Shown: positions 35,786 through 51,604, counted from the stretch's first letter. The stretch: 51,604 nucleotides of DNA from Octopus bimaculoides (GCF_001194135.2 NC_068982.1:179660417-179712020); one strand, 5' to 3'. Translations and numbers: made by a program. The notes: generated by a model not told the origin, from the letters alone.

Positions 35786-35913
35786 TTAGTATGGTTTGCT
35801 ATCATTTTTTGGCCTCTTCAACTGCACTTTCAGTCGTTTCATGCCAATCTGAAATCCATTCATGGCTTGGATTGCTGCTTGTGCTGACAAAGGATTGTCA
35901 AAACTCACAAAAC
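35786..35913 (-). CDS. CELF2: CELF RRM3 C-terminal half and stop (G)[41 protein letters not shown]
   Basis: Acceptor gtccatttttgaacag. Completes RNP1 (CFGFVSF). Near-identical to the CELF1/2 C-terminus. TAA at 35786-35788. Confidence 0.97.
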
Positions 35914-36023
35914 CTGTTCAAAAATGGACAAGTATTGTCTCAACTATCCACTCAAAGTAAAGAGTGTAGCCACTAAAGCAGTTATTCCATTATTATTATT
36001 ATTTTTTTTTTTTTGTCACTATG

Positions 36024-36054
<31 letters not shown>

Positions 36055-37316
36055 AAGACATTTATAGTTTCATAACCATTTTACCATAGATATGCAAAGG
36101 AGATCATCTTGGAAATTGACTAAACAGATGGTATCTGTGGACTAGTGGCACATGTATGTGTATGCGTGTGTACCATTGCATATAAACAAAGTAGCCTGAC
36201 TGATTTTTATTGGGGAGTTGTAATTTAGTTATTATACTTCTGTTCAAGTCTTTCATACTGGACCTACATCAACATGCATATTTTCACTAATGGATATGAC
36301 AATTTACCTAGCACTGGTGGCAATGTATTATGTTTACAAAACATTGCCACTTTCAGTTCAAATCCTGTCAAAGGCATTGCAGCTAGACATTGGATGAGGC
36401 ATTCCTTGCCTGAGGATTCTTGATCCATTTTATTAATAATGGAATCACCATTGATGATAGCATTATTAATGATATCCACTTGTAAAAGGCAACAATTCTA
36501 TTTAATGATGCAAACATTTAAAATTCAGAACTGTCCAATGCACTTTGACAACAAAAATTTATCTGTTGTATATTCAAATCCAAAGATAATTTCCCAGACA
36601 AAACAAAAAGACATAGCGGTAAAAAATGCAATAATTTGCAAGGGACATTGAATAGAATATCTACGAAACGAAGATCCAGTTTGTAAACTGATAACGGAGT
36701 CAAAATACACACCGACACAGCTGGTACTTAAAACATCATTGAATAGAATTTATAAAACTTGAAAAATGAGGACATAAAATATGTCTGAACTTAGCCATTG
36801 TAGGAATAAATGCTCTACACCTAAGATTCAATTGTCAATTTGACAATCTGAGACACCAGTATATCTGATCAATAAAAAGAGAATAACAGACACCATATTG
36901 AAAATGATTTTGTCCAAAATCATTTCAGAGAAAGGGCTAACAAATAAAATTAAAATAAATAAGGGAATTAAAAATTTGTCATTTTTTTTTTTATGCACAG
37001 ACTTTTCACAAACAATATATAGAATATCTATATCTATATATATATATCTATATATATATACATACAGATAGATATGTAGGTAGCCAGATTCCTTCAATTT
37101 TCCTTAAGTTTCATCAGAATATGATTTGTGCAATTTTTTTACATTAATTAATTAAGATTTCATCATTTTTTTTTTTTAATTTTGTTTTTCAAATGTTTTC
37201 ATCAATCTGTTAGATGAATTAATATTTTTACAAGATAGTGTTTCTGATAAAAACATTGAGAAAATATGGTAGTCATAAGGAAGAGTAAAAGAAAACGGCA
37301 CCTATTCAATACATAC

Positions 37317-37460
37317 CAAAGCACTTGCTAAGATTTGTTTGTTTATCAATGAAGACTTTGGCTGAAACAACATTTCCAAATGGAATAAAAGTCTGCATGA
37401 GGTCTTGATCACTGAACTCTTGTGGTAAATGATATATAAATAAGTTGGCGCCGTCTGGAC
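37317..37460 (-). CDS. CELF2: CELF RRM3 N-terminal half (G)[47 protein letters not shown](G)
   Basis: Acceptor ttgcctgttattgcag, donor TTG|gtatgt, 144 nt. RNP2 LFIYHL. GAN, DQD and [15 protein letters not shown] fit CELF1/2 rather than CELF3-6. Confidence 0.97.
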
Positions 37461-38259
37461 CTGCAATAACAGGCAAGAATCACATACAAACAAGCAGTTG
37501 TACTTTGAATGGGACCATTTCTGAATCAACACCGTTAGCTCAATAATACTAAATGGAAGTAGTCAAATATGAAAGGAATAGAACAATGAATCTCAAAACA
37601 AACTGCCAATATAGACTTGGACATTTAACAACCATCAAGATAACAAACGGCTTATTCCGCATAAATTATGAACTAGAAGAAAAATAGCATTTAAGTAGTT
37701 TAACAATTTTTTTCTCCACTATTTGAGATGTGATTTAATTTAAATATATAACATTATATATTTATTTACAGTTGAAGGGAGTTAAATAGCTGTGTCATGT
37801 ATTGTTAGAGCCAACGTCTTACAATTACACACCCACTCAAACTAACCAATGCCTTGCCTTAAGACAGGATTTGAACTCTGTATTATAATAATTCCCCTAT
37901 GACATTAATCTTATACTTCATGCAACATTTCACCAGTTTATTCAAATGTCTAGATGTATTTTTTGTGTTTACTTCTTGATGCATTTATCAACATTAAAAT
38001 ATAAATCATTGGAAGCAAAAATTAACAAAAGATAAAAATAAAAAACAACAATAATAAGAATATACAACAACAGACAGTAAGCTGCTGAGTGTTGTGGACA
38101 GTAAACATTTGAATAATGGCAATCTGAATTTCTATTAGCTCAAAGCAAATAGAATTTTATTAAAGTCATATAAAAAGGTAAATCTTGATGTTTCACAAGT
38201 TAAAAATACATTTAATATGATATAAAAGAAGAGATTGCTCTCTATAAGGGAGTATTTAC

Positions 38260-38346
38260 CTTCGGTTTGTTTCCCAGCAGCAGAATTGGCTGCAGCCTGT
38301 TGGAGCTGCTGAGCTGATTGGCTATTGAATGCATTTGGAAAGGAGG
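38260..38346 (-). CDS. CELF2: CELF1/2 coding exon (A)SFPNAFNSQSAQQLQQAAANSAAGKQTE(G)
   Basis: Acceptor tttttctctttag, donor AAG|gtaaat, 87 nt, phase 1-1. SAAGKQTEG matches the SAAGSQKEG lead-in to RRM3. Confidence 0.93.
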
Positions 38347-42208: not shown

Positions 42209-42430
42209 CTGGAGGGAGCAAACCTGACAAACCTGCGTATTGCTGTATCCCCGAATATGCTTGGCTAAGAGCATCAATACCTGTTGGGTTGGTATTGGAG
42301 CCAATGCCATTCATGTTGCTTGTTACACTTGAGGTCAAATTAGAGAGGTTTGTTAAGGAATTGTTCCCTAGATTTTGCATTCCAGTGAGGCCACTTAGTG
42401 AGTTGGAGGAGGTTGTACCAGTTATAGTAC
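42209..42430 (-). CDS. CELF2: CELF1/2 linker coding exon (G)TITGTTSSNSLSGLTGMQNLG...GIDALSQAYSGIQQYAGLSGLLPP(G)
   Basis: Acceptor ctttttccgatttgtag. DALSQAYSGIQQYA matches the conserved CELF1/2 DALTQAYSGIQQYA motif. The end shown is the CAG|gtaaag donor; other in-frame donors end the exon at 42233, 42224 or 42203. Confidence 0.92.
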
Positions 42431-44964
42431 CTACAAATCGGAAAAAGGTTGTTTGTATAAAAAGAGGTGAGACAAATAAACCCTAAAATGCCAGGTAATC
42501 AATACACTGACATATCAAATACATTCAAATCAATTTAAAAGCATTCATACAACAGAAGATAAACAGATGTATTGCTAATCCTGATGCAACCATTCAATGG
42601 TCAAAACAAGAATACCTAGCATGAAAAGATGTGACATGAGGGAAGAGTTGTCTAGTTAAGATGCTGAAGTTTTCATATTTGAGAAATTTCATAATACATT
42701 TCAATAGGTGAGTCATTTAAACAGGAAATAGTTTGAAAGAAAGAGAGAAAGGATTGACACTAAAAATGTCAAATTAAATCTGCTAGCAGTGATAACCAGC
42801 AAAAGGGGCATGATAGAAATCAGAGAAAATAGAGAGGCAGCTAACAGGAATAATTAATGCTTCTGGTTGTCTCAAAGGTTTTCTAGGTAAACAAGATAAT
42901 TCTTTCAAACATCCCCTCACCAATCAGCCTTTGTATTTTAATAGGAGTTTATGTTTTACCTTAGCTCTTTAATAGCAAGTAGTATCCTCCACTGTGTTTA
43001 TTTTAAAATCTTGTATCAAATGATTACTTTCATATCAAATATTTAGCAGAAACTAAAAGACAATTAGTCCAAAAGAAATTATTTATGTTATACAGAAATT
43101 ATACCTTGATCAGGGTTTGTTAAATGCTTCATAAAGCAATGTATTTGCTGATCGGCTGATTTCTTTTAGCACATTCAGCAAAAATGTCAACAAATAGATT
43201 GGGAACTCCTTCCAGATATTGGTTCCATCCTAGTATTTCATTCATATAATATCTATTTAACTACATACTAAAGATACAGTTTCTATCAAGATAAAGATGT
43301 AACACAGGCTGAGACAGCACTTTTACTTGTAGAGGGTGGTCACATTCAAAGAAACTATAGAGGATAAATACAGCAATAAGAATGAAGAAATGGAAGCTTC
43401 AAATATTTCAACAACAGAGTTAGTAAGAATGAGTGAAGTAGAAAACACTTTATTTAGTATGTTAACTAGTTACAAAATATACCATCTACATAAAAGTATT
43501 AGTGAATGTAGTTAATGAGTTCAAATGAAAGCTATATGAAAATAGCAGGGAATAAATCTTAATTCTATTTATATATTTTTATAATCTTAAAAGTGAAACA
43601 ATATATTGAAAAAATGAATCAACTTAAGTAGAGCTGGAAATACTAAAGACAATCTATCAAAAGACAAACAGCAGAACCTTCCTTTGAGACAAGGAATTAA
43701 GGTAAAGTTTAAGTAAATATGTAAAACTACGTAATATGGATAGAATACAATGAATTGAAAAGGTTTGTGCATAAAATTTAAATAATAATTGGCTAATGGA
43801 TTATTGCCACAATCAGGAACACAAAAAATATGGTGAAAACATTAAATAGAGAGAAATTAACAAAAGTATTGTAGAATTATTATGTGAGGGGCACTTGGCT
43901 GGCACAAGCAATTTATACAAATAAAACATGTACTTCAATATTTGATAAAATATAAATGCAGTAATTCGAAAGTGAAGATGGCTAGAAAAGTTCAACCTCC
44001 TGTATTGTGGCTTGAAAAAAACACAATGAATGTAAAATAGCAACAACATGGACAACAAACACTGTAACAGGACTATAAAAACCAAATAATTAACAAGAAA
44101 ATAAATCAAACCAGACAGAAGTCATAGCAACAACAGCAAAGTAGATGTCTGATAAGACCAATAATGAGAATAATTTAATAAATATGCTTTGAGCCAATAG
44201 TATTGCTATAAACTAAAATTTGATTGAATTTGGTTGAGATAAAATAACAAGCCAGCCATTGTATTGTCTAGCACTATACAATGCCTACAGCATGCAATCC
44301 TGAAAAATACATACAGGAACTAAAATATGCAAAAATCAATAACCTCAATTTCAAACAAGTAGCAGAAATTTATGTTGGAAAAACAGTTTAAGACATAAAG
44401 GGTGAGAAATGTTAATAGATAAACTAGAACAGCTTTTTGGGGCTGGCAGTATTCTGATTTTGCTAGGGATTCAATTTCTCATGATTCTTCTAACATAGGA
44501 TACAACTTGATTTTATGTATATTATATTGACAAAATACCTATTTTATATTCATGCTACTTTTTTTTTTTTTTCATTTTCACTCATTGTCTTGGGAGAATA
44601 CAATCAGTTTATATATATAATGTGTGCTTCTACATTATATTAGACTGAAATCAAATTGATTACTCAAAAATGATATTTATACAAAGAGATGATGTGAAGT
44701 GATATTAAACAAGTTGTTGACAGATGACAATGAAGATAGTCAGTGAAGGCAGTACATTGATAACAAAATATCATGGAGTTGTTAGGTGTGTCAAAGATAA
44801 AATAGATAACAAACAATTAGAATACATAAACTTTGTTAAAGAGAAAACCAATACATTAAAGCCCGTGATGTTTAGTCAGGATTACCAATATCCTGTGGCC
44901 TTTTATTTAATAAAAAAGCTAATTCAGTTATCAAAGCTAGCCAGTAGTATAACATTACACTATC

Positions 44965-45350
44965 AAAGACAGTAGCAGTAATGCCATCATATCCATCTCT
45001 CCATTTTGTACAACACACAGCAGTTAAAAACATAAGCAGTAATGAAATCAATCTGTCTCTCTCCATTTTTGTAAAACACACTATTGTTAAAGACATGATC
45101 AGTAACACATCTATCTCTCCATTTTGTACAACACTGTTAAAAAGACATTGGCAGCAATGACATCTCCATTTTGTATAACACACAACTGTTAAAAGTATTA
45201 GCAGTGAAGTCATCTATATCTATATTGGCAGTAAAGATTATATATAATTTTGTGTAGCACACTACTTCATAAAATATATTAAAAGTAACATAATCTATGG
45301 CGATTCTGTACAACATCATACTGCTAAGTAACTACATCTCCATTTTTGTA
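44965..45350. repeat. Degenerate tandem repeat of about 47-62 bp in a CELF intron
   Basis: CTCCATTTT anchors at 44999, 45061, 45117, 45164 and 45338, followed by gtacaacac...ctgttaaaa...gcagtaatga-like blocks. Confidence 0.8.
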
Positions 45351-45583
45351 ATTTTAGTAGAAATACTTGGTATCATGCACATATTCATAGCAGATATGGA
45401 TTTTACAGACAACAAATTGGAGTAGTGACACACTATATATAGCAAACTAGAGAAACACACACTTAACTAACATCAAACCAACAAAAAATAAGGTAAACAA
45501 AAAAAATCCAATGAAACTGATAGTTTAACATGAAAATACAGAATAGGCCAAGGAGGAGAGAAAAAGGAATAAACTGTACTCAC

Positions 45584-45604
45584 GACAAAAGTTGAAGACA
45601 GGTT
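45584..45604 (-). CDS. Candidate 21-nt frame-preserving microexon (E)PVFNFC(R) in the CELF linker
   Basis: ttctccattgttatcacag|AACCTGTCTTCAACTTTTGTC|gtgagt. No AG in the 155 nt upstream of the acceptor. Phase 1-1, no stop. Confidence 0.55.
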
Positions 45605-46848
45605 CTGTGATAACAATGGAGAAAAATTGATATAGTCATTGTCGAACAGACAGATAACAGAGTAGTGTGCGGAGAATGAATAGTTATTAACCAACAGGTG
45701 AACATCAGTTGTTAGATGAAATAAAAAGGAACATAAATCAAAAAGCAAGGCAATCACAAAACTGAAGTAAAATGTATTTTACAATCGTAAGTAGATTGAA
45801 ACAACACAAGTTACCAAAATCTGTCTTACTGTTTCCCCTACATGGGTGATGTTGACTAACTCTTTAAATGGAAAAATGAATTAATTTCCACAATAATATT
45901 TTCATTTTAAAGAGTAAACAAAATGAAAAGATTTTAATATCTCCTGTTTAAAATAGTTTTTGCTAATAGCTTCATAGAAATCTAACATGGAATATAAACA
46001 TGTATACACCAATATTCATTTCCATTGAGCAGAAAGAATGTTGTTCAATGGTTTCACTGAATTCCTGAATTTCAAAGATTACATTTTTGAAGAAGTCTAA
46101 TACCAAGAGTTACAGATTTACAGACACCTACAAACTCACTTGAATTTTATTTACATTGTTACCAATGTAGATCATCACCATTTACCAGATTTTACACTAT
46201 TAATAGTTAAAAACACATACAGTGTGTGTTGAAAACAGTACAGTGTAGAGTTTTTATCAAGGTTTCTAGACCTATAAGGTTTTTATCTTGGAGACAAAAT
46301 GGTTTTTGTTGGCATGCTCTATTGCTATTACGTAAGACAAGAACAATAACAAAGATATTTAAGGTTTGAACGCTTATCTGATGGCTCCGGATTTCTTGCA
46401 GTTTTTTTAAATATTCTATTTTATTTATTATTATGACTGGTGTATGTTATTACTATTATACTTTTAGCACTGTGTTTTTGTTAGTAAAGTTTCCATTGTT
46501 AATCATCTAGCAGTTTAGAAAATTCGGCATAAGATGGATATGTTTTTAAATATAGTTTTGCTTTGTATAATACAAGACACTGCAGTTGCTACTTGTATAT
46601 GTACCGTGAGCAAGCAAGAAAGTACCAGACCTGTAACACTAATATAATAGATGTAGTGAAATTTTACAACTTTCATACTTACAAACAAATTAATAAATCA
46701 CATTGGCCATTGTAATTCGTTTAATTTTCATAAATGGAGTTTGATATAGCTTTTAAAATTTAGTGGGATTTTGAGGAGACTATTAGTATTTGTTTATGTT
46801 GGATATAAAGCATTTTGTAGTTCTATATTTAAAAGATGCGGAATTATG

Positions 46849-47949: not shown

Positions 47950-48030
47950 CAGATGCACTGGATGCATTTGTGTTTCCTGCAAGCTGGTTTAATGCTGCCA
48001 AACTTGGCATTCCTAGAGCACTTAATGAAC
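47950..48030 (-). CDS. CELF2: CELF1/2 linker coding exon (G)SLSALGMPSLAALNQLAGNTNASSAS(G)
   Basis: Acceptor tttttttctctacag, donor CTG|gtaagt, 81 nt, phase 1-1, open frame, A/S/L/N-rich like the CELF linker. Confidence 0.88.
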
Positions 48031-49845: not shown

Positions 49846-50493
49846 GCGTGAAAAAGTGCCACACCCTAACAGTTGAGGGAACCCGTGGAAGANNNNNNNN
49901 NNNNNNNNNNNNNNNNNNNNNNNNNNNNNNNNNNNNNNNNNNNNNNNNNNNNNNNNNNNNNNNNNNNNNNNNNNNNNNNNNNNNNNNNNNNNNNNNNNNN
50001 NNNNNNNNNNNNNNNNNNNNNNNNNNNNNNNNNNNNNNNNNNNNNNNNNNNNNNNNNNNNNNNNNNNNNNNNNNNNNNNNNNNNNNNNNNNNNNNNNNNN
50101 NNNNNNNNNNNNNNNNNNNNNNNNNNNNNNNNNNNNNNNNNNNNNNNNNNNNNNNNNNNNNNNNNNNNNNNNNNNNNNNNNNNNNNNNNNNNNNNNNNNN
50201 NNNNNNNNNNNNNNNNNNNNNNNNNNNNNNNNNNNNNNNNNNNNNNNNNNNNNNNNNNNNNNNNNNNNNNNNNNNNNNNNNNNNNNNNNNNNNNNNNNNN
50301 NNNNNNNNNNNNNNNNNNNNNNNNNNNNNNNNNNNNNNNNNNNNNNNNNNNNNNNNNNNNNNNNNNNNNNNNNNNNNNNNNNNNNNNNNNNNNNNNNNNN
50401 NNNNNNNNNNNNNNNNNNNNNNNNNNNNNNNNNNNNNNNNNNNNNNNNNNNAGCATGGAAAGCGGACGTTAAACGATGATGATGATGATGATG
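49846..50493 (+). mobile_element. 5'-truncated RTE LINE 3' end spanning an assembly gap
   Basis: Left flank encodes VKKCHTLTVEGTRGR (RTE ORF C-terminus type). Right flank agcatggaaagcggacgttaaac leads into a (GAT)n tail. Possible TSD ATTAGT at 49840-49845 and 50494-50499. Confidence 0.7.
49893..50451. other. Assembly gap (N run) inside a CELF intron
   Basis: N characters. Confidence 1.
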
Positions 50494-51113
50494 ATTAGTC
50501 TGATAGTGAAAGTAATTTGTAAAATGAAGGCAGGACCACCAGATGGACTGCTAACCGGATACAAAAGGCTAAGTTGTCTAACAGCACAATTACTAGAATT
50601 GCTCATCAAATTTCATTCACAATATAACTAAAAAAAGTTATGTATTTTATAGTGTATAATTAAGACTAAAATCACACCAGATTTACAATAGTCACTTAGC
50701 TAAGATACTCGTGAATTTCACACGAAATACTTATAAATTTTGAAATAAGATAAATGTTAAATATAATCATAATTATCGCAAGAAGCATTCTATGTGTAAT
50801 TAAATATGAAAAAAAAAAAGAAAAAAAAACAGCTGAGCATTATCAAGTCAACCCAATATTAAGCAAAGTAAGATGGTTAGAATTCATTGATGGCTACTAT
50901 TGGGATAGTTTCACCATGCTATAGCTGAATTAAAAAGCAATTAGGAAATCATCCATCATGAAATGAAGAGCAAGCAATAAATAATGGCACAAGTAAAAAC
51001 ACTAAGCAAATGAAATATGCAATTCAGCCAGCCATGCAATATCTGAATGTAGTAGAAGTATGTGAGGTGGGTAGTTATGACATGGAGGAGGCTATGGAAA
51101 GATAAGTAAATCA

Positions 51114-51118
<5 letters not shown>

Positions 51119-51205
<87 letters not shown>

Positions 51206-51588
51206 TATATATACATATATATACACATATACACATGTATATGTACATACATATGTATATGTACATATACATATATACGCATATATATATATATATATAC
51301 AAATATACACATATATACGCATATATATATATACAAATATACACATATATACATATATATATATATACATACATACACACACATGTATATATATATATAT
51401 ACATGCATACACACATGTATATATATATATATATATACACACATATATGTATATATACATATACACATATATGTATATATACGTATATATACACACATAT
51501 ATACATCTATGTATATATACGTAGACACATATATACATCTATGTGTGTATATATATATACATATATATATACACATATATACATATAC
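51119..51588. repeat. Long compound TG/TA/CA microsatellite
   Basis: Direct reading of the sequence. Confidence 0.95.
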
Positions 51589-51604
51589 CGAGGTTATTTG
51601 AGGT

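What the first reader, a model, noticed from the sequence alone, without database searches (positions are those of the whole stretch)
45584..45761. Candidate 21-nt microexon with a 155-nt AG-free zone in the CELF linker
Seen: ...ttctccattgttatcacag|AACCTGTCTTCAACTTTTGTC|gtgagt. There is no AG on the pre-mRNA strand from 45607 to 45761 and the tract is pyrimidine-rich. Inclusion replaces a Gly with EPVFNFCR, a hydrophobic, Cys-containing insert in an S/A/N/G-rich linker. Known: long AG-exclusion zones mark distant branch points of regulated exons, and 3-27 nt microexons are enriched in neural programmes (SRRM3/4-type eMIC factors). Inference: a tissue-specific, possibly unannotated microexon in a splicing regulator.
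Basis: partly seen in the sequence, partly recalled or inferred. Interest (0 to 1): 0.72.

Follow-up and report, generated by a model that had tools for sequence, protein, structure and literature searches.

The report
Unproven 21-nt CELF microexon candidate
An intron of a CELF1/2-type RNA-binding-protein gene holds a 21-base stretch that looks like a tiny in-frame exon, but no transcript or close-relative data could be reached, so it is a testable lead that is somewhat more likely an unused look-alike.

Summary
On the minus strand the sequence reads ...ttatcacag|AACCTGTCTTCAACTTTTGTC|gtgagt (45604-45584). The 155 nt before the AG (45761-45607) contain no AG. Inclusion would turn ...SAS-G-TITG... 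into ...SAS-EPVFNFCR-TITG... in the linker of a CELF1/2-type gene (RRM3 E=3e-53 to human CELF1).

The pattern is unusual. It is the only in-frame, stop-free pair of 3-30 nt in 103 kb (both strands) whose two splice-site scores reach this level. About 2% of shuffled introns produce one, and none of 1,500 also had an AG-free zone of 100 nt or more.

The counter-evidence is substantial:
- A second 167-nt AG-free zone in the same intron ends in nothing exon-like.
- The UGC motif expected near the 3' splice site of SRRM3/4-dependent microexons is absent (nearest about -143).
- The encoded peptide is hydrophobic, unlike the linker.
- Three similar but frame-breaking candidates lie in the same gene.

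No transcript, annotation or coleoid orthologue was reachable. Five distant lophotrochozoan orthologous introns show no counterpart.

My estimates: about 0.3 that it is a genuine regulated microexon, about 0.55 that it is an unused or noise-level pseudo-exon. RNA-seq junction reads would settle it.

The parts
47950..48030 (-). Upstream coding exon Eb (81 nt, ...SLSALGMPSLAALNQLAGNTNASSAS + first base of the next codon). Its 5' splice site is CTG|gtaagt.
   Evidence: AG/GT borders are present. Rough acceptor score 12.4, donor 6.6. U1 duplex -9.1 kcal/mol.
45607..45761 (-). 155-nt AG-free, 68% pyrimidine zone upstream of the candidate acceptor.
   Evidence: P(no AG) = 0.011 for shuffles of its own bases. 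It contains UCUC at about -18 and -71 and CUCU at about -58. UGC occurs only at about -143 and -148.
45711..45715 (-). CUAAC, the only branch-point-consensus (CUAAY) match in the zone, about 107-111 nt upstream of the acceptor.
   Evidence: The CUAAY motif is as used in PMC8797185. Its use as a branch point is inferred, not shown. A weaker UGAC site lies at about -32.
45584..45604 (-). Candidate 21-nt microexon AACCTGTCTTCAACTTTTGTC. It is preceded by cacAG and encodes (G)AA CCT GTC TTC AAC TTT TGT C(GT), giving EPVFNFCR in place of Gly.
   Evidence: It is the best in-frame candidate of 131 in the 5,519-nt intron. No transcript evidence was obtained.
45578..45583 (-). Candidate 5' splice site GTC|GTGAGT. 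The intron side is consensus; the exon side is not (C at -1).
   Evidence: The PWM score of 1.5 is below Eb (6.6) and Ec (4.2), the two real donors scored. The U1 duplex of -7.2 kcal/mol equals or beats two real donors of the gene and is in the top 1.8% of 335 GTs in the intron.
45550..45569 (-). 20-nt uninterrupted CU tract TTCCTTTTTCTCTCCTCCTT, 15-34 nt downstream of the candidate 5' splice site. It resembles a PTB-type binding site.
   Evidence: It is the 4th longest pyrimidine run on the minus strand (13 runs of 16 nt or more in 51.6 kb, 2 of them in this intron). Protein binding is inferred only.
45401..45520 (-). UGU/GU-rich stretch downstream (11 TGT in 120 nt against an intron mean of 4.5). 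One TGCATG lies at 45379-45374, about 205 nt after the 5' splice site.
   Evidence: The stretch is in the top 3% of 120-nt windows in the intron. TGCATG occurs 23 times on this strand, so one nearby is weak evidence.
42209..42430 (-). Downstream coding exon Ec (222 nt, (G)TITGTTSSNS...IDALSQAYSGIQQYAGLSGLLPP).
   Evidence: It is homologous to genomic ORFs P0001-P0027 of other lophotrochozoans.
35786..38346 (-). The remaining coding exons that identify the gene: Ed 38346-38260, Ee 37460-37317 and Ef 35913-35786 (RRM3 and the stop codon).
   Evidence: One search gives the spliced ORF. Pfam RRM_1 E=5.5e-19. PDB CELF1 RRM3 2cpz E=2.8e-53 and CELF2 RRM3 E=9e-53.

Best explanation
The 21 nt are most likely an intronic pseudo-exon. 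A good-looking acceptor arises where a pyrimidine-rich, AG-poor block of the CELF intron ends, and a GTGAGT happens to lie 21 nt later in frame. In this reading the spliceosome normally joins Eb (47950) directly to Ec (42430). The 21-nt unit is skipped, or included only as noise. It is too short for exon definition, has a non-consensus exon side at its donor (GTC|), and lacks the UGC enhancer that lets SRRM3/4 rescue such tiny exons.

Shown: the sequence anatomy and its statistics. Inferred: non-use.
For: - The AG-free zone is part of a 341-nt block (45780-45440) that is 67% pyrimidine. Comparable blocks occur at two other places on the same strand, far from this exon candidate.
- A second 167-nt AG-free zone in the same intron ends in no exon.
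- Given such a block, the chance that its closing AG is followed in frame within 27 nt by a donor this good is about 1-3%, and the gene has two such blocks (derived).
- Three other candidates with equal or better site scores (20, 26 and 29 nt, all frame-breaking) lie in the same gene's introns. The local density of look-alikes is therefore high.
- There is no UGC within about 140 nt of the acceptor, although UGC near the 3' splice site is part of the eMIC signature (PMC8797185).
- The donor PWM score of 1.5 is below the two real donors scored, Eb 6.6 and Ec 4.2.
- EPVFNFCR is hydrophobic and Cys-containing in an S/N/G/T/A linker. In contrast, the 24-nt candidate exon shared by L014 and L015 in the orthologous intron encodes linker-like GSSGTSTS / GSGRPTSS.
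- The orthologous introns of five distant relatives (L011, L014-L017) have no counterpart.
Against: - It is the single best in-frame candidate in the intron and the only in-frame one at its score level in 103 kb.
- Only 1.3-2.3% of shuffled introns match the sites, and 0 of 1,500 also match the AG-free zone.
- The U1 duplex energy is as good as two real donors of the gene.
- Several features are what a regulated small exon would carry: the CUAAC at about -110, the UCUC motifs, a 20-nt CU tract just after the donor, a UGU-rich stretch and a TGCATG at about +205.
- Four of the five strict candidates lie in the sense-strand introns of the gene. This could mean that some of them are real.
- The absence of a counterpart in distant phyla-level relatives says little about an exon specific to coleoids.
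Confidence: 0.55

Rival explanations
1. It is a genuine, lineage-specific, regulated alternative microexon of the CELF1/2 gene. The long AG-free pyrimidine tract lets a distal branch point (CUAAC at about -110) be used. Pyrimidine-tract binders of the PTB type, on the upstream tract and on the CU run just after the donor, repress the exon in most tissues. Neuronal factors relieve the repression. These could be lower PTB activity, Rbfox acting at the downstream UGCAUG, or CELF itself acting on the UGU-rich stretch. The result is an 8-residue insert with two Phe and a Cys in the disordered linker.
For: - Frame-preserving 21 nt with AG and GTGAGT.
- Rarity of the combination.
- A 155-nt AG-free zone with CUAAC and UCUC, as described for eMIC exons.
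- A CU run 15-34 nt after the donor, a UGU-rich stretch and a TGCATG.
- A credible U1 duplex.
- Another small in-frame exon candidate is conserved in the same intron of two other lophotrochozoans, so this intron can host small exons.
Against: - No expression, annotation or conservation evidence of any kind was obtained.
- No UGC lies near the acceptor.
- The exon side of the donor is weak.
- The peptide is unlike the linker.
- All the motif evidence is post hoc, and the motifs are not independent of the overall T-richness of the block.
Confidence: 0.3
2. The functional unit is the pyrimidine-rich block itself, not the 21 nt. It would be an intronic binding platform for PTB, ELAV, TIA or CELF-type proteins that tunes splicing of the flanking exons Eb and Ec. 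The exon-like 21 nt would be incidental.
For: - The block 45780-45440 is in the top 1.2% of pyrimidine content on its strand and is not a repeat within the window.
- It holds a CU run and a UGU-rich stretch.
- The gene shows strong conservation of GU-rich sequence at and after the end of Ec, which suggests regulated splicing in this region.
Against: No conservation data exist for the block. Similar blocks elsewhere on the strand look like low-complexity sequence. No binding data exist.
Confidence: 0.12
3. It is a recursive-splicing site or recursive exon that is used to remove the intron in two steps and then removed itself.
For: There is a strong pyrimidine tract followed by AG in mid-intron.
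Against: Joining Eb to the 21 nt gives TCTG|AACCTG, which does not rebuild a 5' splice site, and AG is not directly followed by GTRAGT. The intron is only 5.5 kb, whereas recursive splicing is described mainly for very long introns (own knowledge).
Confidence: 0.02

Closest known systems
eMIC (SRRM3/4)-dependent neural microexons (Irimia 2014 and Torres-Mendez 2019 from own knowledge; Torres-Mendez 2022, PMC8797185, read)
   Same: It is 3-27 nt long, a multiple of 3 and frame-preserving. It has a long AG-exclusion zone, a pyrimidine tract with UCUC, a CUAAY branch-like motif, and sits in a gene with neural roles.
   Different: There is no UGC close to the 3' splice site (nearest about -143). 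The CUAAC is about 110 nt away. No neural inclusion or conservation has been shown. The insert is hydrophobic rather than the charged or polar type common in known microexons (own knowledge).
c-src N1 exon (18 nt), the textbook PTB-repressed neuronal small exon (own knowledge)
   Same: It is a tiny exon flanked on both sides by CU-rich tracts, with a UGCAUG downstream.
   Different: The UGCAUG is single and about 205 nt away. No G-run or other downstream-control-sequence elements are present (0 GGG in 220 nt). Regulation is untested.
Exons with distant branch points marked by AG-exclusion zones (Gooding et al. 2006, own knowledge)
   Same: The AG-exclusion zone is 100 nt or longer and pyrimidine-rich.
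   Different: A plausible proximal branch site (UGAC, A at about -32) also exists, so a distant branch point is not required. A second equal-sized AG-free zone in the same intron has no exon.
Intronic pseudo-exons (splice-site pairs that are never used; Sun and Chasin 2000, own knowledge)
   Same: It has decent AG and GT sites and sits in an intron without any evidence of use. Other look-alikes occur in the same gene.
   Different: It is in frame, stop-free and sits behind an unusually long AG-free tract. That combination is rarer than for a typical pseudo-exon.
CELF1/CELF2 (CUGBP Elav-like family) proteins
   Same: RRM3 is about 90% identical to human CELF1/2. The ...DALSQAYSGIQQYA... linker motif is shared. 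The candidate lies in the divergent linker.
   Different: No microexon at this position is known to me in vertebrate CELF genes. A literature search found none.

Membership tests
Alternative microexon (3-27 nt) | Length 3-27 nt, bounded by AG and GT, preserving the reading frame of the flanking exons | tested here: met
   21 nt, cacAG|...|GTGAGT, frame kept with no stop
Alternative microexon (3-27 nt) | Presence in mature transcripts (junction reads, cDNA or an annotated isoform) | not testable with these tools
   No spliced octopod or coleoid sequences were in the reachable collections. The peptide is not in the paper library. The supplement of the one octopus splicing paper is not held.
Alternative microexon (3-27 nt) | Conservation of the exon, its splice sites and flanking intron in related species | tested here: inconclusive
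   The orthologous introns of five distant lophotrochozoans have no counterpart. No close relative was available. The metagenome codon-pattern scan gave only two bacterial chance hits.
eMIC / SRRM3/4-dependent microexon | UGC motif close to the 3' splice site | tested here: not met
   The nearest TGC motifs are at about -143 and -148. None lies in the last 140 nt. The feature is as listed in PMC8797185.
eMIC / SRRM3/4-dependent microexon | Long AG-exclusion zone and long pyrimidine tract with UCUC | tested here: met
   155 nt AG-free, 68% pyrimidine, UCUC at about -18 and -71, CUCU at about -58
eMIC / SRRM3/4-dependent microexon | Strong branch-point sequence (CUAAY) | tested here: inconclusive
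   There is one CUAAC, but about 110 nt upstream. Branch-point use was not measured.
eMIC / SRRM3/4-dependent microexon | Neural-specific inclusion that depends on Srrm234 | not testable with these tools
   No expression data
PTB-repressed small exon (c-src N1 type) | CU-rich tracts on both sides of the exon | tested here: met
   The upstream tract has UCUC. A 20-nt CU run lies 15-34 nt after the donor and is the 4th longest on the strand.
PTB-repressed small exon (c-src N1 type) | Downstream enhancer with UGCAUG and G-runs; repression by PTB shown | tested here: inconclusive
   There is one TGCATG at about +205 and no GGG in 220 nt. Protein dependence is not testable.
Exon with distant branch point (AG-exclusion-zone class) | AG-exclusion zone of 100 nt or more with the branch point at its upstream end | tested here: inconclusive
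   The zone length criterion is met. The branch point is unmapped, and a proximal UGAC at about -32 is an alternative.
Recursive splice site / RS exon | A 5' splice site regenerated after ligation to the upstream exon | tested here: not met
   The junction would read TCTG|AACCTG
CELF1/2 gene (host gene) | C-terminal RRM3 with the CELF signature and a divergent linker | tested here: met
   RRM_1 E=5.5e-19. CELF1 RRM3 2cpz E=2.8e-53 and CELF2 RRM3 E=9e-53.

The most novel reading that the evidence does not exclude
This would be a coleoid- or octopod-specific, SRRM-independent microexon in the CELF1/2 linker. It would be repressed through flanking CU tracts and possibly autoregulated by CELF through the downstream UGU-rich stretch. 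It would insert two aromatic residues and a cysteine (EPVFNFCR) into an otherwise polar disordered hinge. That could change hinge-mediated clustering of the protein; CELF2 hinge-dependent nuclear condensation is reported in vertebrates (titles of PMC11566031 and PMC13522573).
Probability: 0.3. Interest if true: 0.35.

Novelty: not a real feature. Interest (0 to 1): 0.2.

Why it matters
If real, it would be one more lineage-specific microexon. It would sit in a master splicing and mRNA-stability regulator of neurons and muscle, and it would add hydrophobic 'sticker' residues to a disordered hinge that matters for CELF2 clustering in vertebrates. It would also be an example of a microexon with a long AG-exclusion zone but without the UGC enhancer. 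That would be of modest interest for how tiny exons are recognised outside the SRRM3/4 programme. If it is a pseudo-exon, it is ordinary intron sequence, and a useful reminder that AG-free pyrimidine blocks occur without exons: a second one lies 770 nt away.

Tried and rejected
- **Protein search with the spliced inclusion peptide.** It returned only 27 single-exon genomic ORFs of distant lophotrochozoans (72% identity or less), none spliced and none containing EPVFNFCR.
- **Searches with the Eb and Ea genomic ORFs, to reach contigs covering the intron in closer relatives.** No candidates were found.
- **Contigs of the closest relatives.** L001, L002 and L005-L010 carry only 92-1,258 nt upstream of Ec, too short to reach a site 3.15 kb upstream. 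blastn shows no similarity to the microexon region.
- **Degenerate codon pattern AGAACCNGTNTTYAAYTTYTGYCGT in JGI metagenomes.** The two hits both lie in a bacterial-looking open reading frame and are chance matches.
- **Long contigs of five distant relatives (L011, L014-L017).**
  - Eb and Ec were located, with no EPVFNFCR-like exon between them.
  - A VFQFC tblastn hit in L015 has no splice sites.
  - L016 and L017 share no conserved island in this intron; the only short match is an A-rich run.
  - L011 has a 21-nt in-frame candidate of equal score (ENSNMFHC), but it matches at only 6 of 21 bases, so I treat it as coincidence.
- **Repeat and transposon origin.** There is no second copy of 45200-46100 in the window and no tandem repeat. 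The two AG-free zones do not align beyond a shared CTAACAACT.
- **Literature.** The peptide string is not found. The only paper combining octopus and microexons has no held supplement. No CELF microexon is described. Accession numbers of the related contigs are not mentioned in any paper.
- **Rfam and tRNA scans of the window.** Nothing was found.
- **Recursive splicing.** Rejected from the sequence.

Full report
**What is there**

On the minus strand the window reads ...caatttttctccattgttatcacag|AACCTGTCTTCAACTTTTGTC|gtgagtacag... The 21 nt lie at 45604-45584. It is 68% pyrimidine.

The host gene runs on the minus strand. I placed seven AG/GT-bounded coding pieces:

| Exon | Coordinates |
|---|---|
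| Ea | 48331-48257 |
| Eb | 48030-47950 |
| candidate | 45604-45584 |
| Ec | 42430-42209 |
| Ed | 38346-38260 |
| Ee | 37460-37317 |
| Ef | 35913-35786 (ends in a stop) |

Spliced together they give one open frame with or without the 21 nt. Skipping gives ...NASSAS-G-TITGTT... and inclusion gives ...NASSAS-EPVFNFCR-TITGTT.... The C-terminus is an RRM (Pfam RRM_1, E=5.5e-19). It matches the solved RRM3 of human CELF1 (2cpz, E=2.8e-53) and CELF2 (E=9e-53). I could not verify that the organism is an octopus. The nearest sequences I could reach are 72% identical or less in exon Ec.

**Is it more than chance?**

The AG-free zone alone is weak evidence.
- AG gaps on this strand average 20 nt. This one ranks 8th of 2,395, and at least three of the seven longer gaps are an N-run or simple repeats.
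- Shuffling the zone's own bases leaves it AG-free in 1.1% of trials.
- A second 167-nt AG-free zone (44832-44664) lies in the same intron and ends in ...tttttgag|taatcaa..., with no donor nearby. The two zones do not align beyond a shared 9-mer.
- The zone is part of a 341-nt block (45780-45440) that is 67% pyrimidine. That is the top 1.2% of windows on the strand, and two other such places exist outside this part of the gene.

The combination with the donor is rarer. I used rough position-weight matrices written from remembered metazoan frequencies, so the scores are approximate.
- The acceptor scores 5.5 bits, in the top 1.25% of AGs on the strand. The donor scores 1.5 bits, in the top 4-6% of GTs.
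- Of 8,763 AG..GT pairs of 3-30 nt on both strands, five reach both scores, and this is the only one with a length divisible by three.
- In the 5,519-nt intron it is the best of 131 in-frame, stop-free candidates of 3-51 nt.
- Block-wise shuffles of the intron yield an equal or better in-frame candidate of 3-27 nt in 1.3-2.3% of trials. None of 1,500 also had an AG-free zone of 100 nt or more.
- By U1 snRNA duplex energy the donor (-7.2 kcal/mol) equals or beats two real donors of the gene (Ed -6.8, Ee -7.2). It ranks 6th of 335 GTs in the intron.

Two points count against over-reading this. Real sequence is lumpier than shuffles. The other three strict candidates on this strand (49561, 20 nt; 42170, 26 nt; 39971, 29 nt) all lie in introns of the same gene and all break the frame. 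Either the local density of look-alikes is high or the gene has several small regulated exons. My chance estimate for an in-frame candidate with this AG-free zone somewhere in the gene's coding introns is about 0.5-4%.

**Fit to known regulated microexons**

The published signature of eMIC (SRRM3/4)-dependent exons in flies and mammals has four parts: long AG-exclusion zones, UGC close to the 3' splice site, long UCUC-rich pyrimidine tracts, and strong CUAAY branch sequences (PMC8797185).
- Met: the AG-exclusion zone, and UCUC at about -18 and -71.
- Partly met: one CUAAC, but at about -110.
- Not met: the nearest UGC is at about -143.

The SRRM3/4 label therefore fails one listed feature. A UGAC with its A at about -32 could serve as an ordinary proximal branch site, so a distant branch point is possible but not required.

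Downstream of the donor there are three further features:
- a 20-nt uninterrupted CU run (45569-45550), the 4th longest on the strand and one of two in the intron;
- a UGU-rich stretch (45520-45401), in the top 3% of windows;
- one TGCATG at 45379.

This resembles the arrangement around PTB-repressed small exons such as c-src N1 (own knowledge). However, these features were found after the fact and are not independent of the T-richness of the block.

**Expression and conservation, the decisive evidence**

None could be obtained.
- The protein search with the inclusion peptide returned 27 hits. All are single-exon ORFs read from genomic contigs of other lophotrochozoans and run on into the intron (GKGLFH...). 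None is spliced and none contains the insert.
- Searches with the genomic ORFs around Eb and Ea found nothing.
- The contigs of the closest relatives stop 92-1,258 nt upstream of Ec and share no similarity with the microexon region.
- Five long contigs from distant relatives contain the whole orthologous intron, and none has a related exon.
- L011 has an equally scoring 21-nt in-frame candidate that also begins with AA, but only 6 of 21 bases agree. I regard it as coincidence, and as a measure of how easily such candidates arise.
- L014 and L015 share a 24-nt in-frame candidate ending CATCAG|GTTGG that encodes linker-like GSSGTSTS / GSGRPTSS. Small exons in this intron are therefore plausible in the phylum, but the window has no copy of that one.
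- The literature search found no CELF microexon and no usable octopus exon table.

**Weighing**

| For a real exon | Against |
|---|---|
| In frame and stop-free | No UGC near the acceptor |
| Unique at its score level | C at -1 of the donor |
| Long AG-free tract | Hydrophobic, Cys-containing insert in a polar linker |
| Credible U1 pairing | Exon-less twin AG-free zone nearby |
| Flanking CU and UGU motifs | Frame-breaking look-alikes in the same gene |
| Host gene class with much linker splicing | Low base rate of sequence-only microexon predictions being real |

I took priors of 1-15% for a real microexon of 27 nt or less in these introns and the chance rates above. The posterior then ranges from about 10% to 50%. 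I settle on about 0.3 for a genuine regulated microexon, about 0.55 for an unused or noise-level pseudo-exon, and the remainder for the pyrimidine block being the functional element.

**Verdict**

The interpretation can be neither confirmed nor refuted with the data reachable here, and its SRRM3/4 flavour is not supported. If real, this is a new member of a well-known kind. One RNA-seq junction count would decide it.

Noticed in passing
window 42240-42145 (minus strand); L001, L002, L005, L011, L014-L017 at the end of their Ec exons: The last about 35 nt of exon Ec and roughly the first 20-45 nt of the next intron (CAGCAATACGCAGGTTTGTCAGGTTTGCTCCCTCCAG|gtaaaggtttgtttcatg...ttccag|gtgtga...cat|gtgagg) are conserved at the nucleotide level across eight lophotrochozoan loci. 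The conservation includes the synonymous sites of GCA GGT TTG. L016 and L017 stay about 81% identical for roughly 160 nt past the exon. The stretch is GU-rich, like a CELF binding element. It also carries a chain of 5'-splice-site-like sequences: an internal CAG|GTTTGT, then sites 38 and 64 nt into the intron. This could reflect alternative donors or autoregulation.
   Followed up: partly
L014:7530-7553 and L015:1937-1960: A 24-nt in-frame candidate exon lies in the orthologous Eb-Ec intron of two distant relatives. The two copies share AGTGG.AC...CATCAG|GTTGG and encode GSSGTSTS / GSGRPTSS. It resembles the 3' end of exon Eb in the window and in L011. The window has no separate copy.
   Followed up: partly
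window 44664-44832 (minus strand): A second AG-free zone of 167 nt lies in the same intron. It also contains CTAACAACT but ends in ...tttttgag|taatcaatttg, with no usable donor. It serves as an internal control showing that such zones occur without exons.
   Followed up: yes
window 39971-39943, 49561-49542 and 42170-42145 (minus strand): Three other short AG...GT units in introns of the same gene have site scores equal to or better than the candidate (29, 20 and 26 nt). All would shift the frame. They could be pseudo-exons or poison exons. Four of the five strict candidates in the 103 kb scanned lie on the sense strand of this gene.
   Followed up: no
L011:8826-8846: The best in-frame candidate in the orthologous intron of a distant relative is also 21 nt and also starts with AA (ccag|AAAACTCTAATATGTTTCACT|gtgagg, ENSNMFHC). 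It shares only 6 of 21 bases with the window's candidate.
   Followed up: partly
window 44965-45217: Diverged direct repeats of about 25-55 nt (62-93% identity, three copies each) lie 370-640 nt downstream of the candidate. Weak inverted matches (70-75%) link this area to the AG-free zone (45612-45631 and 45704-45733). They are probably chance matches in AT-rich sequence.
   Followed up: partly
window 49867-50501 and 51100-51600: There is an assembly gap (a run of N) in the intron upstream of Ea, and TA/CA-type simple repeats at the window end. Both produce the longest apparent AG-free gaps.
   Followed up: no
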